Below the pieces are notes generated by a model. It worked only from the letters and a program-made list of their open reading frames with translations. It did no database searches and had not been told where the DNA came from. Both the position numbers and the translations under genes were made by a program. Below, piece after piece: positions 57,988-64,000 of a stretch of DNA of 64,000 nt. The stretch is from positions 292,313 through 356,312 of IMG/VR virus record IMGVR_UViG_3300023174_000036; one strand, 5' to 3'. Position 1 is the stretch's first letter. Each line of letters opens with the position of its first letter.

Positions 57988-58088
57988 GGTATCGCTGGAA
58001 TTCGTAACCAGCACTAAAGGGCCCCGGCTCTTTTTTTATGGCTATTCACTTCTTGCATACGCCACAAGGCGGCCTGTATAATTACAGT

Positions 58089-58764
58089 ATGCTTGATAAT
58101 ATATTTAAACCCACCCTGGATTGGATACGCGATGACTACACCAGTAATAGAATACGTTTTTGTCTTGAGAGCCTTGCTTGGGCTATCTCTATTGGTTGTA
58201 GTATCACTATGGCCACAACTGTGCCCACACCTCCCTTACTTGTCTTGTACCCAATTTGGATTACAGGTTGTGCTATATACGCTTGGTGCGCTTTTAGTCG
58301 GCGTTCCTTTGGTATGTTGGCTAATTATGTGCTTCTTACCACAATCGACACTGTGGGATTGATAAGGATGCTATGATAACAGATGCCGAACTAGACACCC
58401 TGATAAACCAATTGGATGCTGTGTTGTTACAGTATAACCATTGCCCAGCCCATGAAGTAGCGGGCGCATTACTCAGCAGAATAACCTTGTTAATGACCAT
58501 GGATCCCTCAGTGGGCAAGCACATGCTGAAGTTTGTGTGGGAGAAACTGGACGAAATTGAACAAGCCAATCCGGGAGGTATGATATGATTGATATGAAAC
58601 TCAGCAAGTACTGGGTGGGCTCAAACCATCATGAATTTGAACTGATGGCAGTGTACACAGAGTCGGATACCAAATGGGCACGTTATAGAGACATCTTGAA
58701 CGACAAAGAGTACAACTGTAGACTTGAAGCGTTTTTGGCGAGATTCAGCCCCAGCGTAGATTAA
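58089..58764 (+). CDS. three small genes (58089-58376 membrane protein; 58373-58588; 58585-58764)
   Basis: ATGA-coupled ORFs. Confidence 0.6.
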
Positions 58765-58984
58765 CACACCGCGAAGCGGCTGCGAAAAAATTTTTGAGCA
58801 CCCTGTAGTCTATAACCATTCACAAGCCAATGCACAGGCCTCGGCTTGTTCTGGGCGTGGATAACCAAACACATTGACTAACCAACTGAAGTCCCGTATA
58901 CTGTGTACATGAACTTGACTCATGTTGCTTTCTTCTTACTGTTGACTATCATTGTGATAGACATACTAACACGATTAGGCTAAC

Positions 58985-59212
58985 ATGGGTCGACTCATAA
59001 TAGTGTTGATAGCAGTGTGCCAATTGACAGGCTGTGCGGCATACACAGTGGCCAATACTGTCACTTACATAGCAACGGATAAGAGCATGATGGATCATGG
59101 GTCTAGCACACTGGTGAAAGCCGATTGTGATGCAGTTCGCGTGGTACAAAAAGGCACTTATTATTGTGAAGTTCGTGATGTAAGCACTACGTATAATAGG
59201 AACGCATTCTAG
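58985..59212 (+). CDS. small lipoprotein
   Basis: Lipobox LTGC. Confidence 0.65.
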   Translation: MGRLIIVLIAVCQLTGCAAYTVANTVTYIATDKSMMDHGSSTLVKADCDAVRVVQKGTYYCEVRDVSTTYNRNAF

Positions 59213-59335
59213 TATGAAAGAGCTGATTCTGCGTATATGTGACAATGAGTTACTGTATACACTAGCATTGATATATGTATGCACTATGGCATTCACTATA
59301 AGCTTCTTGACAGCATACTTGATAGCGTAAGCTAT

Positions 59336-59671
59336 AAGACCCCGCTGTGACTGCTAGCACACTAAGCTATCAAGTCTAATTTGGGTCGGGGCACTAATAG
59401 TGTGTCTGCTAACAACGCTAGACTCAGTCGGTCTTCCCGTATGTAGAAGCGTATGCCCACGGCCATTACTGTGTATGAGTAACTACAATAGCCCAGTTGA
59501 TCCATGACATCTGGATCCACCGTATAAGAATCAAAACAGTATAAGCGCATAGTGTATATAGCAAAAGACCCCGCTGTGGGTTCATGGGTTTCCAACATGA
59601 GCGCACTGTGAACGCTTCGCTGTGCCGGAACTATACGCTAGTACACACTCGACTGAAAAGACCCCGCTGTG
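59336..59671 (+). repeat. three direct copies of AAGACCCCGCTGTG
   Basis: At 59336-59349, 59565-59578 and 59658-59671. Confidence 0.85.
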
Positions 59672-60002
59672 AGGTATAGTGATTTGGGGGTTTTTGTGTG
59701 GGAATAGTGAGTAACCATTAAAACTATGCCTCTCTGCCCCACTCGCAACCGATTTTTTCTACCCTATGCCCACGGTTGCCCGAGCAGAATATGACTCATA
59801 ATCCAGAATCTGTTGCACTTTGTCACACAATTCAACACTTTTTGACACTTTTCTAGACCAGCTCCCTCACTGTATAGCTCTATACGCAAGCGGGTGGCAG
59901 TCTACTCACACTATTCCAACAGTTCCTATACACTATATACAGTCTAGCACGGTGAAAGATAGTGTTCACTGTTAAATACTATGTCAAGACCGGAGGTGTA
60001 CA

Positions 60003-60263
60003 ATGGCAAGAGGTATAGCACAAATACGTTTTCCTACTCATCAAGCGTATATAAGTCAAACAGAAGATGGGTTAGTATGCTTTAAACACAATGACCGTAG
60101 CTGTGATATGGAAGTATTCCCATTAGATAATAACATAGCGGCCAGTGACTATCTACTAGAGCCATTAAAAAACTATGAATATCACATAGCATGGAGTGAG
60201 GAATCCGAGATGGCAAAGGAACTGTGGACTCCTATTGTGTGTAGGCGGTCCAATCAGATTTAA
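60003..60263 (+). CDS. hypothetical protein
   Basis: TAAATA promoter plus GGAGG SD. Confidence 0.6.
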   Translation: MARGIAQIRFPTHQAYISQTEDGLVCFKHNDRSCDMEVFPLDNNIAASDYLLEPLKNYEYHIAWSEESEMAKELWTPIVCRRSNQI

Positions 60264-60289
60264 ACAGTCAAAAGAGGCCGGACTCAGTC

Positions 60290-60437
60290 CAACCAAAACC
60301 CGCATTGTCAAGCGGGTTTTCTTTTTTGAGTAGCGCAAAAACAACACCAAAAGTCGTCACCGTTCTAGTTAGTTGGCGCACACTAACTTAATACCTTTCG
60401 CCGCAGTCGCCGTCCACCCCCACTATGTTCGAACGAT
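60290..60437 (-). ncRNA. candidate small RNA
   Basis: TTGACA(60472)-17-TATAAT(60449); internal stems; terminator-like hairpin 60295-60320; no credible ORF. Confidence 0.5.
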
Positions 60438-60562
60438 GCTTATATTATACGTCTTTTAAGCCGTGCTGTCAACAGGGTCTTTCCCTAGTGTTGTGAAAAA
60501 GCCACGGGGCGAGTGCGGGGCGTTTGGTTGACTGCCTCGAGCTTCTGCGCTATAATTATGGC

Positions 60563-60889
60563 ATGAAGACAAAAAGAACTGCCCGCAAAGACTCAAACTA
60601 CATCATCTACGAAGCCGTTTCGGAGCGTGGAGAAAACTACATTGGCCTAACCCGCAAGGGAGATGTCACAGTAGCCAAGGCTGTGAAAGAACGCTGGCGC
60701 AAGCATCTAAGCCGTGCCCGTAACGAAAACAGACTGTGGGCACTCTACATCTACTTGAAGTCGGGTGGATTAGACATGGCTTGGGAGCATAAGGTCATCA
60801 CTGTGATTAGGGGTCGTGCTGAGGCTTATGCATACGAGCGTAGCCTAGTCAAAGAGCTTGGCCCTTCACTAAACGATCAATATCAATAA
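60563..60889 (+). CDS. GIY-YIG-like nuclease
   Basis: YIIYE...ENYIGLT...RWRKH...E...LN; apparently leaderless. Confidence 0.75.
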   Translation: MKTKRTARKDSNYIIYEAVSERGENYIGLTRKGDVTVAKAVKERWRKHLSRARNENRLWALYIYLKSGGLDMAWEHKVITVIRGRAEAYAYERSLVKELGPSLNDQYQ

Positions 60890-60958
60890 CCCAGCGGTTG
60901 ACTGGGTCTTTGATTCCTGCTATAATTATGGCATACACTAACAAACAAGGAGCGAACC

Positions 60959-61663
60959 ATGTTTAAATTGCTTTCAACGGCGAACCCCAAAATCCAAAAA
61001 GGAACGAAACTTGGATACCTATCATTCATCTTACACCTTGCCCCAGCTGATCTCAGCGGACGCGAGACCTGCCCTAAGCGTACTCCAGGCTGTACCGCCG
61101 CTTGCCTTAACACTGCCGGTCGCGGTGGCATGTTCAAGCGTGGGGAATCCACTAACACGATCCAGCGGGCACGTATACGTAAGACCAACGAGTTCTTCAA
61201 TAATCGCGAACAGTTCATGTTCGACTTATACCACGATATAGTCAAAGCCAAGAAGTTCGCTGACAAGCAGGGTTTGATTCCAGTGTTTCGTTTGAATGGC
61301 ACTAGCGATTTGAGCTGGGAGAAGTACACCGTAGGCACTACGGACATGAACTTGTTTCAATTGTTCCCCACTACCCAGTTCTATGACTACACTAAGATCT
61401 TGGGCCGTAAGGTTAGCCAATACCCCAACTACCACTTGACGTTCAGCAAGGCAGACGGCAATGACGCTGATGTTGCAGAAGCATTAATGCAGGGTATGTC
61501 AGTGGTTGCGGTATACGATGCTATCCCAGAGGGTGTTCCGTCAGCTGATGAAACAGACTTGCGCTTCTTAGACCCTAAGGGCATTATGCTTGGTTTGAAG
61601 GCTAAGGGTCGTGCTAAGAAGGACTACAGTGGGTTCGTAATCCGTTTGAAGGAGGTTGCATAA
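60959..61663 (+). CDS. Gp88-like protein (radical-SAM-like Cys motif)
   Basis: CPKRTPGCTAACL..AGRG, FRLNGTSD, FYDYTK, NYHLTFS, DLRFLD. Confidence 0.8.
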   Translation: MFKLLSTANPKIQKGTKLGYLSFILHLAPADLSGRETCPKRTPGCTAACLNTAGRGGMFKRGESTNTIQRARIRKTNEFFNNREQFMFDLYHDIVKAKKFADKQGLIPVFRLNGTSDLSWEKYTVGTTDMNLFQLFPTTQFYDYTKILGRKVSQYPNYHLTFSKADGNDADVAEALMQGMSVVAVYDAIPEGVPSADETDLRFLDPKGIMLGLKAKGRAKKDYSGFVIRLKEVA

Positions 61664-62958
61664 TGGCTCAAGTAGACGGCGTCACAGTTCGAATTGGTGA
61701 CTGGGTAGGCTTTAAGAGCGACATTGAGCAGAGTGGCCGTATTGTAGCCATCAAGCAGACCTATGCGGGTACGAGCTTGACACTGGAAAACGAGTGCGGG
61801 TTCAGTGGGGACTACATTGGCGGAGAAACAATAACCACAGAGCTAGCCAGGGATTGTTGGATAGACGGTTGACGTCAGACCCAAAAGGCAGTATAATTAA
61901 GACATAGACACACAAAGGAGCGATACTTATGTATGACATAGTCAAAAACCCAATTCCCCGTAGCGGATTGTTTGCTACGCCCACCCTGGATCAGATTGCC
62001 AATCAAATTGATGGCTTCCCAGCAGAGACCAAAGCCCAACTGTATTTGGTAATGCAATTGACTCTCAACGCTTGCCACAAGATTGTGGAAGACGAGATCC
62101 TTTCAAAAGAGGTATTTGCACAATGATGTTCACACTGGAAATCTACAAGAAGGATGCTCGCAAGAAAACAGGCGAGCGACTGGTTGGCAAGTACGACTAT
62201 GACCGTAAAGATCGTGAGGCCATGTTGCGTGAGAGCAATGAGCTTTATGATGCTTATCCACCCAAGTTGGGCTACAGGTTTGAAATACACGAGACTTATG
62301 TGAAGAAGCATAATTTAATGGGTGGGGGTGAGTTCCAGGAACGTTATGACACTCCTCACTATTGTAGCCCGGCAAGCGAATCTTATTGGAGCATGTGATG
62401 TTGACTACAGTACTTAAATGGGTAGGGACGATCCTTACAGTGGGTGGCGCATTAATGACAGCTATTGATGTGGACCCTTTGAACATCTACTTGTTCAATG
62501 CGGGTGCCCTGGCTTGGCTCGTTGCGGCCGTCCGTATGAAAGAGCTTTCATTGATTGTGGTTAATGGTGCTCTGTTGACAATCTACGTGATTGGCTTTAT
62601 ACTACGTATACCAACTTAAAAAGGAGCGAAGATGTTATCAATCAAAGAAGTGAATCAGGCGATCATGCTACAGACGTGGACGGACATTGAACTCCGTAGC
62701 ATGATTGATGCGGTACAGTGGAACAGGGCCCAGCTGGCCAAACGTGTCAAACGTTCAATCAGTGTAGGCGACAATGTAGAGTTCACGAGTAGCAAGACAG
62801 GCAGACTCACACGTGGGTTCGTAACCAAAGTGGCCATCAAGTATGTCACAGTGGACACTGGCATGGGCCTGTGGAGAGTGCCAGCGAACATGTTGTCAAA
62901 GGTTGAGGATGATCCAATGGATGACTTCAACTATGTGGGATCCAAGCATCACTATTAA
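61663..62958 (+). CDS. early small genes (61663-61872, 61929-62126, 62123-62398, 62398-62619 membrane, 62632-62958)
   Basis: AAGGAG SDs and coupled ORFs. Confidence 0.65.
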
Positions 62959-63012
62959 CCCGCCAAAGTGAATGGGAATTGACAGGGATCAGTTCATGTG
63001 CTATAATAAGCA

Positions 63013-63125
63013 CATGAACAGTTAGAAAGCAAGGCGATCCTCAAATGCAAGGACCCACGCAGAAATGCAAAAAGGGTCGTAGCCAAGGGATACGAAGAGA
63101 GTTTGGAGACTCTGCCTAAGCAAAA
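63013..63125 (+). ncRNA. structured leader/ncRNA 1
   Basis: AGGC/GCCT, GACCC/GGGTC, GCA-GAAA-TGC and AGAGT/ACTCT stems after a sigma70 promoter. Confidence 0.55.
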
Positions 63126-63141
63126 CAAAGAAGGAGCGAAT

Positions 63142-63282
63142 ATGTCAAAAGAGATGTATGAGATTCTAGCGCACCTAGACCGTGCCGCAGAGCTGATGTT
63201 TGAGTATGGCCTGAATGGCTATGCCGAAGATGTTGGCATCTTGATGGGCCAGCTAGAAGCAGATGCACTAGAAGTTGAGTAA
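63142..63282 (+). CDS. 46-aa acidic protein (not in ORF track)
   Basis: AAGGAGCGA SD; MSKEMYEILAHLDRAAELMFEYGLNGYAEDVGILMGQLEADALEVE. Confidence 0.7.
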   Translation: MSKEMYEILAHLDRAAELMFEYGLNGYAEDVGILMGQLEADALEVE

Positions 63283-63328
63283 TCCGTAGGGTTATTGACA
63301 AAATCTGTTTCATGTGCTATAATAAGCA

Positions 63329-63618
63329 CATGAACAGTTAGAAAAGAGTTAAAGGTTACCTACACCGTTAGGTACTACGATATCCCTAAGTGGCGGCGAC
63401 GGCTTCCGGGGACCGGAGTACATGAAACAGGAGCAATCCGGAGAAGCGGCGGAGTATGTAGGCAGTAATGACCGTGCAGGCCTATACGAGACGTTCGTAT
63501 AGGTAGACATAGATGTACAATGGTTCCGCTAGTTCTTTTCTAACTGATTAGGGGCGCTCAGGTGCAAGGCCGGTGCTTAAACGAGAGACTTACTTCTCAC
63601 GCCCAGTCGGTTCTACCA
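63329..63618 (+). ncRNA. large structured ncRNA 2
   Basis: 13-bp closing stem 63335-47/63534-46, several hairpins, own promoter, no ORF in track. Confidence 0.65.
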
Positions 63619-63718
63619 AGAATAACCATGTTGTCAACCAGGTTATTTTTTTAAGCGAGTTGACGTTTTGGTTCTTTTGCGTTATAATACATATACACAG
63701 ACACAAAAGGAACCCAAA

Positions 63719-63973
63719 ATGCTTACAAACTGCATAGCAAAAGCAAAGCTCGTTTTTAACAAAAATTTAAAAACATACAAACTCGTCGTAGCCTTTAACG
63801 CACACAAAACAATTAAGCCAAACGGGCAAGTCAAATATGCGTTCCCTACGCAAGCAAAATGCGCTTATGTTAGTGGAGACTTACTTGCAGAAAACTTGCA
63901 AGCAGAGTTAACAAAAGTACTACCTACAGTCTACAGCACACTACGCACAAACAGCGTAGAATTTGTAGAATAA
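63719..63973 (+). CDS. early hypothetical protein
   Basis: Promoter at 63660; AAGGA SD; start reassigned. Confidence 0.65.
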   Translation: MLTNCIAKAKLVFNKNLKTYKLVVAFNAHKTIKPNGQVKYAFPTQAKCAYVSGDLLAENLQAELTKVLPTVYSTLRTNSVEFVE

Positions 63974-64000
63974 CCCTACAGCCCGTAAGGGCTTTTTATA

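What the first reader, a model, noticed from the sequence alone, without database searches (positions are those of the whole stretch)
63295..63618. Large structured non-coding RNA under a consensus early promoter
Seen: TTGACA-17-TATAAT followed by about 290 nt without a credible ORF. CAGTTAGAAAAGA (63335-47) pairs perfectly with TCTTTTCTAACTG (63534-46). Inside are TACCTA/TAGGTA, TCCGG/CCGGA, GGA-GCAA-TCC (GNRA loop), CCTATACGA/TCGTATAGG and possibly GCGGAG/TTCCGC. CCCTAA (63384) could pair with TTAGGG (63548), and a GGGCG/CGCCC domain follows, ending near ...CTACCA. I cannot assign it to tRNA, tmRNA, RNase P or a known ribozyme. Inference: an early-expressed phage RNA (decoy/sponge, RNAP-binding or catalytic).
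Basis: partly seen in the sequence, partly recalled or inferred. Interest (0 to 1): 0.72.

Follow-up and report, generated by a model that had tools for sequence, protein, structure and literature searches.

The report
New abundant structured jumbo-phage RNA
The flagged stretch is a real non-coding RNA of about 210 bases, folded into two branched domains closed by one long stem; it belongs to a previously undescribed family in uncultured freshwater jumbo phages, usually heads their tRNA gene arrays, and is far more abundant in lake RNA samples than the genes beside it, but its function is unknown.

Summary
Confirmed and extended. Window 63335-63546 (+) encodes a structured ncRNA under a perfect sigma-70 promoter (63295-63323). 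It matches no Rfam 15 family.

More than 230 homologous loci exist, all in uncultured freshwater phage or metagenome contigs. There are none in 185,579 prokaryote species genomes and none in four cultured relatives.

Covariation is very strong. In 73 sequences, 93.5% of cells pair (40-46% when partners are slid), and 49 of 64 pairs show compensatory changes.

The fold is a 21-bp closing stem P1 (14-28 bp in relatives) and two three-way-junction domains (P2-P5 and P6-P7).

In relatives the RNA opens tRNA operons. Some have an rrn-like leader (tandem promoters, boxA-like GTTCTTTAAAAA), and a tRNA, mostly Asp, often starts within 15 nt of P1.

In three lake metatranscriptomes, assembler depth over the core is roughly 10-100 or more times the flanks. 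Two runs hold head-to-tail contigs joined inside P1, and no such joint was found in the DNA searched. This implies ends within P1 (RNase III-like), and either circular RNA or a library artefact.

Best reading: a trans-acting stable phage RNA tied to the tRNA/translation module. That role is inferred, and the function remains unknown.

The parts
63295..63323 (+). Sigma-70 promoter: -35 TTGACA 63295-63300, 17-nt spacer, TG 63315-16, -10 TATAAT 63318-23. The predicted start is near 63330-63332 (inferred).
   Evidence: 12/12 match, TG extension. A 29-nt identical copy including the first transcribed bases lies at 63000-63028. In 47 of 124 relatives the -10 ends 15 nt or less before P1.
63335..63355 (+). 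P1 5' strand (closing stem). It pairs with 63526-63546: 19 standard pairs and 2 mismatches in the window.
   Evidence: Thirteen of 15 modelled pairs show compensatory changes. Relatives carry entirely different P1 sequences. Many G-U pairs fix the RNA to the + strand.
63356..63369 (+). P2 5' strand: P2a UUA (63356-58), P2b CCUACA (63359-64), P2c CCGUU (63365-69). Partners are 63466-68, 63457-62 and 63448-52.
   Evidence: P2b fifth pair is CG:61 / GC:12. P2c pairs are GC:62 / AU:11, UG/CG/UA and CG/UA. All cells pair (96-100%). P2a never varies, so it is inferred.
63372..63421 (+). P3-P4 arm: P3 GUACU 63372-76 with AGUAC 63417-21, and an apical hairpin GGC-GACG-GCU (63395-63404). This arm is divergent in the window.
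   Evidence: P3 and P4 covary strongly in relatives. The window's inner fold comes from MFE and suboptimal folds. P4 loop is YGAYGG in 62 of 101 sequences.
63422..63447 (+). Conserved junction AUGAAACA (63422-29), P5 hairpin GGA-GCAA-UCC (63430-39) closed by C63428-G63441, and junction AGAAGC (63442-47).
   Evidence: A82, G84, A85 and A86 of the alignment are invariant. P5 pairs are GC:27 AU:17 CG:13 GU:8. Hairpin length varies by non-multiples of 3.
63448..63469 (+). P2 3' strand: GGCGG 63448-52, internal loop AGUA 63453-56, UGUAGG 63457-62, bulge CAG 63463-65, UAA 63466-68, linker U 63469.
   Evidence: GUAAUGA is nearly invariant across the family.
63470..63525 (+). 3' domain, type A. P6a GACC 63470-73 with GGUU 63522-25. 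P6b GUGCA 63474-78 with UGUAC 63514-18, AAU bulge 63519-21. P7 GCCUAUACG 63480-88 with CGUAUAGGU 63496-504, 7-nt loop AGACGUU 63489-95. Conserved internal loop AGACAUAGA 63505-13.
   Evidence: P6b and P7 pairs show 3-6 pair types each. The P6a fourth pair is CG/UA/AU. P7 loop is AGACGKU in 87 of 101 sequences. A second 3'-domain type (B) exists in relatives.
63526..63546 (+). P1 3' strand.
   Evidence: As for the P1 5' strand. The head-to-tail RNA contigs join at 63527 plus 9-22 nt of P1 sequence.
63551..63605 (+). Downstream small structured module: GGGCG 63552-56 with CGCCC 63600-04, enclosing two hairpins. It may not be part of the mature RNA.
   Evidence: Only near-identical copies occur in L003 and L211, with a variant in L035 and L041. 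Depth is 0 to about 1.6 in all four RNA runs over 63529-63639.
63621..63652 (+). Intrinsic-terminator-like hairpin AAUAACC...GGUUAUU followed by a U run (63646-52). It ends the transcription unit in this phage.
   Evidence: Sequence and fold. It falls below the G-C threshold of the scan. Terminators after the RNA are rare in relatives, 5 of 124.
62979..63138 (+). Upstream duplicate promoter (62979-63007) and a roughly 100-nt leader. In several relatives this leader directly precedes the RNA.
   Evidence: In L006, L013, L025, L044, L088 and L206 the leader abuts the RNA, so the 47-aa ORF (63139-63282) plus the second promoter looks like an insertion or duplication.

Best explanation
Window 63335-63546 encodes a member of a previously undescribed family of stable, highly structured phage RNAs, 190-240 nt long.

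Shown:
- The fold: a long closing stem P1, a three-way junction from which P2 leads to a second three-way junction (P3/P4 arm and P5 hairpin), and a P6/P7 arm.
- The + strand is the RNA strand.
- The RNA does not code for protein.
- The family is restricted to uncultured freshwater jumbo-phage contigs.
- Homologues sit promoter-proximal and lie on the same strand as phage tRNA arrays.
- The core is strongly over-represented in lake metatranscriptomes.

Inferred mechanism:
- Host sigma-70 RNA polymerase transcribes the RNA early and at a high rate.
- In many relatives it is the first product of an operon built like a bacterial rrn operon: tandem promoters, a boxB-like hairpin, a boxA-like antitermination box, a long processing stem, then tRNAs. 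On this reading the RNA occupies the slot of 16S rRNA.
- It is released by double-strand cleavage inside P1 (RNase III-like). The neighbouring tRNA's 5' processing then trims the rest.
- It accumulates as a compact stable RNA with about 15 bp of P1 retained.
- It then acts in trans as part of the phage's tRNA/tmRNA translation-takeover module. Its invariant junctions and loops (GUAAUGA, AUGAAACA, GGUAGAGAUAGA, and two apical loops showing GAY) would bind a protein or RNA partner. This last step is the least certain.
For: Structure:
- 91.6-93.5% of cells pair against 38-46% when partners are slid. 39-49 of 64 pairs show compensatory changes. 0 of 500 shuffles reach the observed values.
- an unbiased MI scan recovers exactly these helices.
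- the constrained fold is within 3.3 kcal/mol of the MFE.

No known family:
- Rfam; ARAGORN.

Not coding:
-.

Distribution:
- more than 230 loci, one copy each.
- a single copy in the window's own genome.
- absent from four cultured relatives and from 185,579 species genomes.

Context:
- 55 of 124 unique loci have a same-strand tRNA downstream. In 21 it starts within 15 nt, and 15 of those are tRNA-Asp. No locus has an opposite-strand tRNA.
- 79 of 124 have a promoter within 110 nt upstream.
- a boxA-like GTTCTTTAAAAA sits at a fixed distance upstream in 37 of 172 contexts.

Expression:
- core depth reaches 1069, 194 and 82 in three runs, against 0-12 on the flanks.

Ends in P1:
- two head-to-tail contigs whose linkers are truncated P1 strands.
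- the X16 joint matches the flanks of the L237 gene.
- no such joint in DNA.

Trans rather than cis action:
- The window copy is a stand-alone unit with its own terminator.
- In 37 of 124 relatives the next gene has its own promoter straight after P1.

Translation module:
- The same genome carries 29 tRNAs and a two-piece tmRNA.
Against: - No function is demonstrated and no partner is identified.
- Logan contigs carry no strand. Depths are assembler word depths summed over several related phages, so abundance is semi-quantitative.
- Run X7, which holds this exact phage on both flanks, shows no contig over 63125-63645. The tool warns that such a hole proves nothing.
- RNase III cleavage is inferred only from helix length and from two junction contigs. 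The implied 3' overhang (1-3 nt) is not resolved.
- The phage encodes no RNase III of its own. That fits use of the host enzyme but adds no support.
- The window copy has no boxA leader and no adjacent tRNA. The nearest tRNAs are about 2.2 kb away, across the contig ends, if the ends adjoin.
- The boxA resemblance rests on the E. coli consensus as I recall it.
Confidence: 0.6

Rival explanations
1. It is a cis-acting 5' element of the transcription unit. It would be an RNA that modifies the transcribing polymerase (as the put RNAs of phage HK022 do), or an rrn-leader-like folding or processing cassette that secures read-through, processing or stability of the downstream tRNAs or mRNAs, with no role of its own in trans.
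For: - It is almost always promoter-proximal.
- Terminators after it are rare, 5 of 124 loci, so transcription usually runs on into what follows.
- It is associated with boxA-like leaders.
- tRNAs begin within 15 nt of P1 in 21 loci.
Against: - The downstream content is not conserved: tRNA, a promoter plus ORF, other RNA modules, or a terminator as in the window.
- 37 of 124 downstream genes bring their own promoter within a few nt of P1.
- The core accumulates far above both flanks, which is typical of a stable end product.
- About 200 nt with around 50 invariant unpaired bases is far more than processing stems need.
Confidence: 0.15
2. It is an anti-defence decoy or sponge. The abundant early RNA would mimic a host or phage nucleic-acid target, or titrate a defence protein such as an anticodon nuclease, a dsRNA sensor or a toxin.
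For: - Consensus early promoter and very high abundance.
- Co-location with tRNA arrays, which are often interpreted as counter-measures to tRNA-targeting defences (my own knowledge).
- A long dsRNA stem, and apical loops showing GAY in 94 or more of 101 sequences (P7) and 62 of 101 (P4).
Against: - No resemblance to any known target or antitoxin RNA.
- The loops show the Asp codon GAY, not a tRNA anticodon-loop mimic.
- No defence or anti-defence gene is linked to it; the neighbours are small DUF proteins.
- This is pure inference.
Confidence: 0.1
3. It is a self-processing or circularising RNA. The head-to-tail contigs would reflect covalently closed circles made in vivo, either by a ribozyme activity of the conserved core followed by ligation, or by a host ligase after cleavage in P1.
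For: - Two independent metatranscriptomes have contigs joining 63527 back to 63354 or 63349 through 9 or 22 nt of truncated P1 strands.
- One joint matches a known gene's flanks exactly.
- No such joint occurs in IMG/VR DNA or in the about 390 loci fetched so far (of which about 270 belong to this family).
Against: - Unitig depth does not give the depth of the junction words themselves. A few template-switch or chimeric reads of a very abundant linear RNA would produce the same contig.
- No ribozyme family matches.
- RNase III ends (5'-P, 3'-OH) do not suit RtcB.
- The phage encodes no RtcB or Rnl2-type ligase. The Rnl1 search is uninformative because its control was silent.
- The joints lie at different distances from the core in the two variants.
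Confidence: 0.07
4. It is a diverged member of a known family that Rfam failed to detect (for example a GOLLD or ROOL fragment, a minimal RNase P RNA, 6S or Y RNA), or it is not an RNA at all (a small ORF or a DNA-level repeat).
For: - GOLLD and ROOL share the context: phage-encoded, near tRNA islands, abundant (PMC12286853).
- A 26-aa ATG ORF exists at 63422-63502.
Against: - No Rfam hit up to E = 10 in 63295-63660.
- At about 200 nt it is far shorter than GOLLD (over 800 nt in many members) and, as I recall, ROOL (about 580 nt).
- No P4-type pseudoknot, no 6S-type bubble, no Ro gene.
- The ORF is not conserved.
- Invariant G-U pairs (UG in 73 of 73, GU in 71 of 73) would be C-A mismatches on the other strand or in DNA.
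Confidence: 0.03

Closest known systems
GOLLD and ROOL RNAs (Rfam; Kretsch et al. 2025, PMC12286853)
   Same: - Encoded by phages and prophages.
- Often next to tRNA islands.
- Elaborate covariation-supported folds.
- Very abundant (ROOL is reported to be as abundant as 16S rRNA).
- Function unknown.
- GOLLD was first found in lake metagenomes.
   Different: - No sequence or structure match.
- Three to four times smaller, about 200 nt.
- A simple two-domain fold closed by a 21-26-bp stem.
- No pseudoknot detected.
- Oligomerisation was not tested.
- Restricted to one lineage of freshwater jumbo phages.
Stable 'species 1 / species 2' RNAs (rnaD, rnaC) of the phage T4 tRNA gene cluster (recalled from memory; not retrieved here)
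   Same: Small stable phage RNAs of unknown function, co-located and co-transcribed with phage tRNA genes and matured by host RNA-processing enzymes.
   Different: The phage group and size differ, and no homology could be tested with these tools. The T4 RNAs are not known to sit in a long RNase III-type stem or behind a boxA-like leader.
16S/23S rRNA precursors in bacterial rrn operons
   Same: The operon grammar in relatives matches: tandem sigma-70 promoters, a boxB-like hairpin, a boxA-like box (GTTCTTTAAAAA against the E. coli GCTCTTTAACAA), then a product enclosed by a long stem formed by its flanks, followed by tRNAs.
   Different: - The enclosed RNA is about 170 nt with no similarity to rRNA; Rfam SSU and LSU models are silent.
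- The window copy lacks the boxA leader.
- RNase III cleavage is not demonstrated.
phi29 pRNA and HK022 put RNAs (phage RNAs transcribed directly from strong early promoters)
   Same: Structured phage RNA that starts within a few nt of a strong early promoter, near a genome or contig end.
   Different: No match to the Rfam pRNA model (I did not check whether Rfam holds a put model). Different size and fold. Linked to tRNA genes, not to packaging or terminator read-through functions.

Membership tests
GOLLD (Rfam) | Match to the family covariance model, in particular its conserved 3' domain | tested here: not met
   No hit at gathering score in the 64-kb window, and none up to E = 10 in 62900-64000.
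ROOL (Rfam) | Match to the family covariance model; a multi-pseudoknotted fold of about 580 nt | tested here: not met
   No Rfam hit. The RNA is about 200 nt, and the MI scan finds no non-nested pairs.
GOLLD/ROOL-like context class (phage RNAs at tRNA islands) | Phage-encoded, adjacent to tRNA genes on the same strand, abundant transcript | tested here: met
   55 of 124 loci with same-strand tRNAs downstream, 21 within 15 nt; core depth 10-100 or more times the flanks. In the window itself no tRNA is adjacent.
tRNA / tmRNA | Cloverleaf or tRNA-like domain, with a tag ORF for tmRNA | tested here: not met
   ARAGORN finds nothing in the window. The phage's real tmRNA lies elsewhere in the genome.
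RNase P RNA | P4 pseudoknot with conserved CR-I and CR-V sequences; match to the Rfam RNase P models | tested here: not met
   No Rfam hit up to E = 10. No long-range non-nested covariation. I recall GGAAAGUCC and ACAGAA as the CR motifs; neither is in the sequence.
Y RNA / YrlA | Ro (TROVE) protein partner encoded nearby; Ro-binding stem plus a tRNA-like module | tested here: not met
   No TROVE gene in the phage genome and no Rfam hit.
Riboswitch or cis-regulatory leader | A conserved downstream gene class and an expression platform overlapping a short P1 | tested here: not met
   Downstream content varies. P1 is 21-26 bp. The window copy ends at its own terminator.
Known self-cleaving ribozymes and group I/II introns | Match to the family models; conserved catalytic cores | tested here: not met
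   No Rfam hit. The junction AUGAAACA / AGAAGC / UA does not fit the hammerhead core CUGANGA / GAAA / UH on direct reading. Catalytic activity itself cannot be tested with these tools.
RNase III-processed stable RNA (rRNA-like maturation) | About 20 bp or more of dsRNA formed by the flanks, with mature ends inside it showing a 2-nt 3' overhang | tested here: inconclusive
   The helix length criterion is met: 14-28 bp, mode 21-26. The junction contigs place the ends inside P1 with a 1-3-nt 3' overhang. These are assembled contigs, not mapped ends.

The most novel reading that the evidence does not exclude
The RNA is matured like a miniature rRNA. It would be transcribed behind a boxA-type antitermination leader, excised from a 21-26-bp processing stem, and then covalently circularised in vivo. 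That would make it the first stable circular non-coding RNA class of a bacteriophage. It would act in the phage's translation-takeover module, possibly through its two GAY-displaying loops on tRNA-Asp or a factor that binds it.
Probability: 0.15. Interest if true: 0.88.

Novelty: categorically new. Interest (0 to 1): 0.78.

Why it matters
Structured RNA classes of 200 nt or more with this much covariation are rare finds. Past ones (riboswitches, GOLLD/ROOL/OLE, HEARO/omega RNAs) each opened new biology.

This family is abundant in nature, compact enough for biochemistry and cryo-EM, and single-copy. It is tied to the least understood part of jumbo-phage genomes: the tRNA/tmRNA arsenal.

It also shows that some phages copy the grammar of host rRNA operons (boxA leader, processing stem, trailing tRNAs) to make a non-ribosomal RNA.

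The head-to-tail molecules, if real, raise the possibility of circular stable RNAs in phage infection.

It gives a concrete, testable entry into the long-standing question of what the non-tRNA RNAs inside phage tRNA clusters do.

Tried and rejected
- Rfam at gathering score and at E up to 10 gave nothing relevant; the only hit was mir-153 at 63665-63720, E = 0.63, which is chance.
- blastn of the region against 50,697 GenBank phage records gave no match.
- The single-sequence fold z-score is only -1.05, so thermodynamics alone would not have supported the finding.
- The coding reading of ATG 63422 was rejected.
- The local hairpin TACCTA/TAGGTA was rejected in favour of the distal P2 pairing.
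The stricter pattern gave one chance hit.
- Phage-encoded RtcB, Rnl2-type ligase, Ro, RNase III and CCA-adding enzyme were all absent. The Rnl1 search is uninformative because its control was silent.
- The covariance model found nothing in XacN1, RAS14, Xoo-sp13 or Tunturi_5.
- The four pattern hits in prokaryote genomes are chance.
- The MI scan for pseudoknots found none.
- Neighbouring proteins gave only DUF or unknown families.
- A hammerhead-like reading of the inner three-way junction was considered and dropped, because the core does not match.
- Similarity of GGUUACC/GGUUCC to the antisense of 16S helix 45, and of AGAGGAC to the sarcin-ricin loop, was judged coincidental.
- The supplement of the 10,006-candidate viral structured RNA survey (PMC10690425) is not held, so I could not check whether this motif is among its unnamed candidates.
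- No paper describing this RNA was found.

Full report
**Where the window lies.** The window is the last 64 kb of a 356,312-bp IMG/VR jumbo-phage record that is 96% complete and has 39.9% G+C. One neighbouring protein (Pfam GP88) has its best GenBank phage matches, 46-49% identical, in Stenotrophomonas phages CM1 and RAS14 and Xanthomonas phages XacN1 and Xoo-sp13. The genome carries 29 tRNA genes and a two-piece tmRNA of the betaproteobacterial type. No tRNA lies in the window.

**The observation.**
- A perfect TTGACA-17-TATAAT promoter with a TG extension lies at 63295-63323.
- Its core and the first transcribed bases (29 nt) are an exact duplicate of 63000-63028.
It forms the outer part of a 21-position helix.
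- No ORF is credible. The only ATG frame (63422-63502) changes length (2-46 aa) and frame among homologues.
- Rfam gives nothing at gathering score or up to E = 10.
- Folding the single sequence is not exceptional, z = -1.05. The case therefore rests on comparison with homologues.

**Homologues.**
- A neighbouring 108-aa protein and an exact promoter word led to related IMG/VR contigs. These carry 72-79% identical copies of the region.
- The invariant word GGTTACCTASAYYRYTAGG then hit 116 viral contigs and at least 120 metagenome contigs, all freshwater or lake samples.
- These yielded 152 distinct sequences.
- A covariance model built from 37 of them (R1, 203 positions, 64 pairs) gave the following results:
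  - exactly one copy in the window's genome;
  - one copy in 73 of 76 sources tested, 50-206 bits;
  - none in XacN1, RAS14, Xoo-sp13 or Tunturi_5.
- The same word occurs four times among 185,579 prokaryote species genomes. None of those places scores with the model.
- The family is therefore known only from uncultured freshwater phages.

**Structure.**
- On a plain MAFFT alignment of 37 sequences with a structure I specified, 91.6% of cells form standard pairs, against 38-45% when partners are slid by 1-3 columns. 39 of 64 pairs change on both sides, and 0 of 500 shuffles reach any observed measure.
- On the model-aligned set of 73 sequences the figures are 93.5%, 49 of 64 and 0 of 500.
- An MI scan that ignores the model returns the same helices as its top pairs and finds no pseudoknot.

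The helices in window coordinates are:

| Helix | 5' strand | 3' strand | Note |
|---|---|---|---|
| P1 | 63335-55 | 63526-46 | closing stem |
| P2a | 63356-58 | 63466-68 | invariant, inferred |
| P2b | 63359-64 | 63457-62 | |
| P2c | 63365-69 | 63448-52 | |
| P3 | 63372-76 | 63417-21 | encloses the P4 hairpin, GACG loop |
| P5 | 63430-32 | 63437-39 | GCAA loop |
| P6a | 63470-73 | 63522-25 | |
| P6b | 63474-78 | 63514-18 | |
| P7 | 63480-88 | 63496-504 | AGACGUU loop |

- All pairs except two in P1 are standard in the window. This fold is within 3.3 kcal/mol of the MFE.
- P1 is 14-28 bp in relatives (mode 21-26) and has completely different sequences in different clades.
- Invariant G-U pairs (UG in 73 of 73, GU in 71 of 73) put the RNA on the + strand.
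- Unpaired segments are nearly invariant: UUAGG, AUGAAACA, GGAGAAGC, CAGUAAUGA, GGUAGASAYAGA.
- The 3' domain comes in two forms. The window has type A.
TACCTA/TAGGTA, TCCGG/CCGGA, GCGGAG/TTCCGC and CCCTAA/TTAGGG are not supported.

**Context.**
- In 111 of 244 loci ARAGORN finds tRNA genes within 1.5 kb.
- Among 124 unique loci with a strong P1:
  - 55 have a same-strand tRNA downstream;
  - in 21 it starts within 15 nt of P1, and 15 of those are tRNA-Asp;
  - none has an opposite-strand tRNA;
  - 79 have a sigma-70 promoter within 110 nt upstream, and 47 of those are as close as in the window.
- In 37 of 172 upstream contexts a boxA-like word (GTTCTTTAAAAA and variants) lies at a fixed 60-70 nt before GGTTACC. 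It is preceded by tandem promoters and a hairpin.
- From established knowledge of E. coli rrn operons (boxA GCTCTTTAACAA, RNase III stems around 16S and 23S, spacer and trailing tRNAs), this is the grammar of an rRNA operon with this RNA in the 16S position.
- Downstream of P1 there is a new promoter in 37 of 124 loci and a terminator in only 5.
- The window copy is one of the rare stand-alone units. It runs RNA, a small non-conserved module (63551-63605), a terminator-like hairpin with a U run (63621-52), then the next promoter at 63660.

**Expression.** Logan contigs of four freshwater metatranscriptome runs were laid on 62900-64000.
- Word depth over the core (63344-63528) reaches 1069 in X16, 194 in X18 and 82 in X19. 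The flanking ORFs show about 0-12, and 63529-63639 shows essentially zero.
- The contigs carry family-specific variant sequences, so they come from this RNA family in several related phages.
- Caveats: contigs have no strand; depths are assembler word depths summed over relatives; and run X7, which holds this very phage on both flanks, has no contig over 63125-63645.

**Head-to-tail joints.**
- X16 (depth 189.7) has a contig running from 63527 back to 63354 through 9 nt. X18 (depth 14.9) has one running from 63527 back to 63349 through 22 nt.
- The X18 linker is a truncated P1 3' strand joined directly to a truncated P1 5' strand, leaving about 15 bp of P1.
- The X16 linker equals the 3' and 5' flanks of the short-P1 gene in L237.
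- A pattern for such a joint in DNA finds only one unrelated place in 2.9 million viral contigs, and none in the about 390 loci fetched so far, of which about 270 belong to this family.
- The joints are therefore made at the RNA level. They are either circles or head-to-tail chimeras of a very abundant linear RNA, for example from reverse-transcriptase template switching.
- Either way they place both ends inside P1, with the 3' strand 1-3 nt longer. That fits RNase III but does not prove it.
- The phage encodes no RtcB, Rnl2-type ligase, RNase III, Ro or CCA-adding enzyme.

**Interpretation.** The best-supported account is a new class of stable, trans-acting phage RNA. It is made at a very high rate from host-type promoters, excised from a long processing stem, and linked by genome organisation to the phage's tRNA/tmRNA module.
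- A cis-acting role is less likely because what follows the RNA is not conserved and often has its own promoter, and because the RNA greatly out-accumulates its flanks.
- Decoy, ribozyme and circular-RNA readings are not excluded.
- One lead is unexplained: both apical loops show GAY, the Asp codon (P7 AGACGKU in 87 of 101, P4 YGAYGG in 62 of 101), and tRNA-Asp is the commonest immediate neighbour. The loops do not vary with the neighbouring tRNA.

**Comparison with known RNAs.**
- GOLLD and ROOL are the nearest by context: phage-encoded, near tRNA islands, abundant, function unknown (PMC12286853). Membership is excluded by the Rfam tests and by size.
- The stable RNAs of the T4 tRNA cluster are a second analogue, which I cite from memory only.
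- I found no publication describing this RNA. I could not check the unnamed candidates of a large viral structured-RNA survey.

Noticed in passing
G000:C1 about 278207-278644 (outside the window; L397:16226-16644, minus strand): The phage encodes a circularly permuted (two-piece) tmRNA that matches the Betaproteobacteria model (RF01850 126 bits, RF04321 136 bits). It sits next to a 27-gene tRNA array at 264-276 kb. This hints at a betaproteobacterial host.
   Followed up: partly
window 63311-63332 and 62995-63016: The -10 hexamer of both promoter copies sits inside an 8-bp inverted repeat, CATGTGCT-ATAATA-AGCACATG. This has the geometry of an operator for a dimeric repressor and overlaps the transcription start.
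   Followed up: no
window 62979-63282: The first promoter copy drives a conserved leader of about 100 nt (63030-63125) and then a 47-aa ORF (63139-63282). In relatives L006, L013, L025, L044, L088 and L206 the same leader runs straight into the RNA, so the ORF plus the second promoter looks like a recent insertion or duplication.
   Followed up: partly
L050:1-330, L059:740-1080 and similar loci: Upstream of the RNA, relatives carry tandem near-identical sigma-70 promoters, each followed by a hairpin on AGTTAGRAA, and then GTTCTTTAAAAA. This is an rrn-like boxB/boxA antitermination leader inside a phage tRNA array.
   Followed up: partly
L237 and L044 (3' end of the RNA): In some relatives the P6b 3' strand reads TTGACAATGG and serves as the -35 of the next gene's promoter, with 17 nt to GTGCTATAAT. 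The RNA gene and the downstream promoter therefore overlap.
   Followed up: no
L037:467-636 (minus strand), L017, L018, L059 downstream of the RNA: Other recurrent small modules follow P1 in relatives. One is about 75 nt, GTCCC...CTGAGTTCGCAACTCAG...GGGACGCCA, with an acceptor-like stem and an encoded GCCA end that neither ARAGORN nor Rfam calls a tRNA. Another is AAGGCATTCAGGTAGACCCTGATGTAAGYCCAATCTA. These may be further uncharacterised small RNAs or processing signals.
   Followed up: no
window 58000-64000: The region is dense in strong sigma-70-like promoters, nearly all on the + strand: 20 found against 10.2 expected, with eight at 11-12 of 12 matches (seven of them on the + strand). They separate very small ORFs of unknown function. 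This is the layout of an early host-takeover region at the contig end.
   Followed up: no
G000:C1 1530-1689: tRNA-Met and tRNA-Arg lie on the + strand at the very start of the contig. If the contig ends adjoin, they lie about 2.2 kb downstream of the RNA, as in relative L025 (tRNA-Met, Leu and Arg at +1.1-1.4 kb). No terminal repeat was found.
   Followed up: partly
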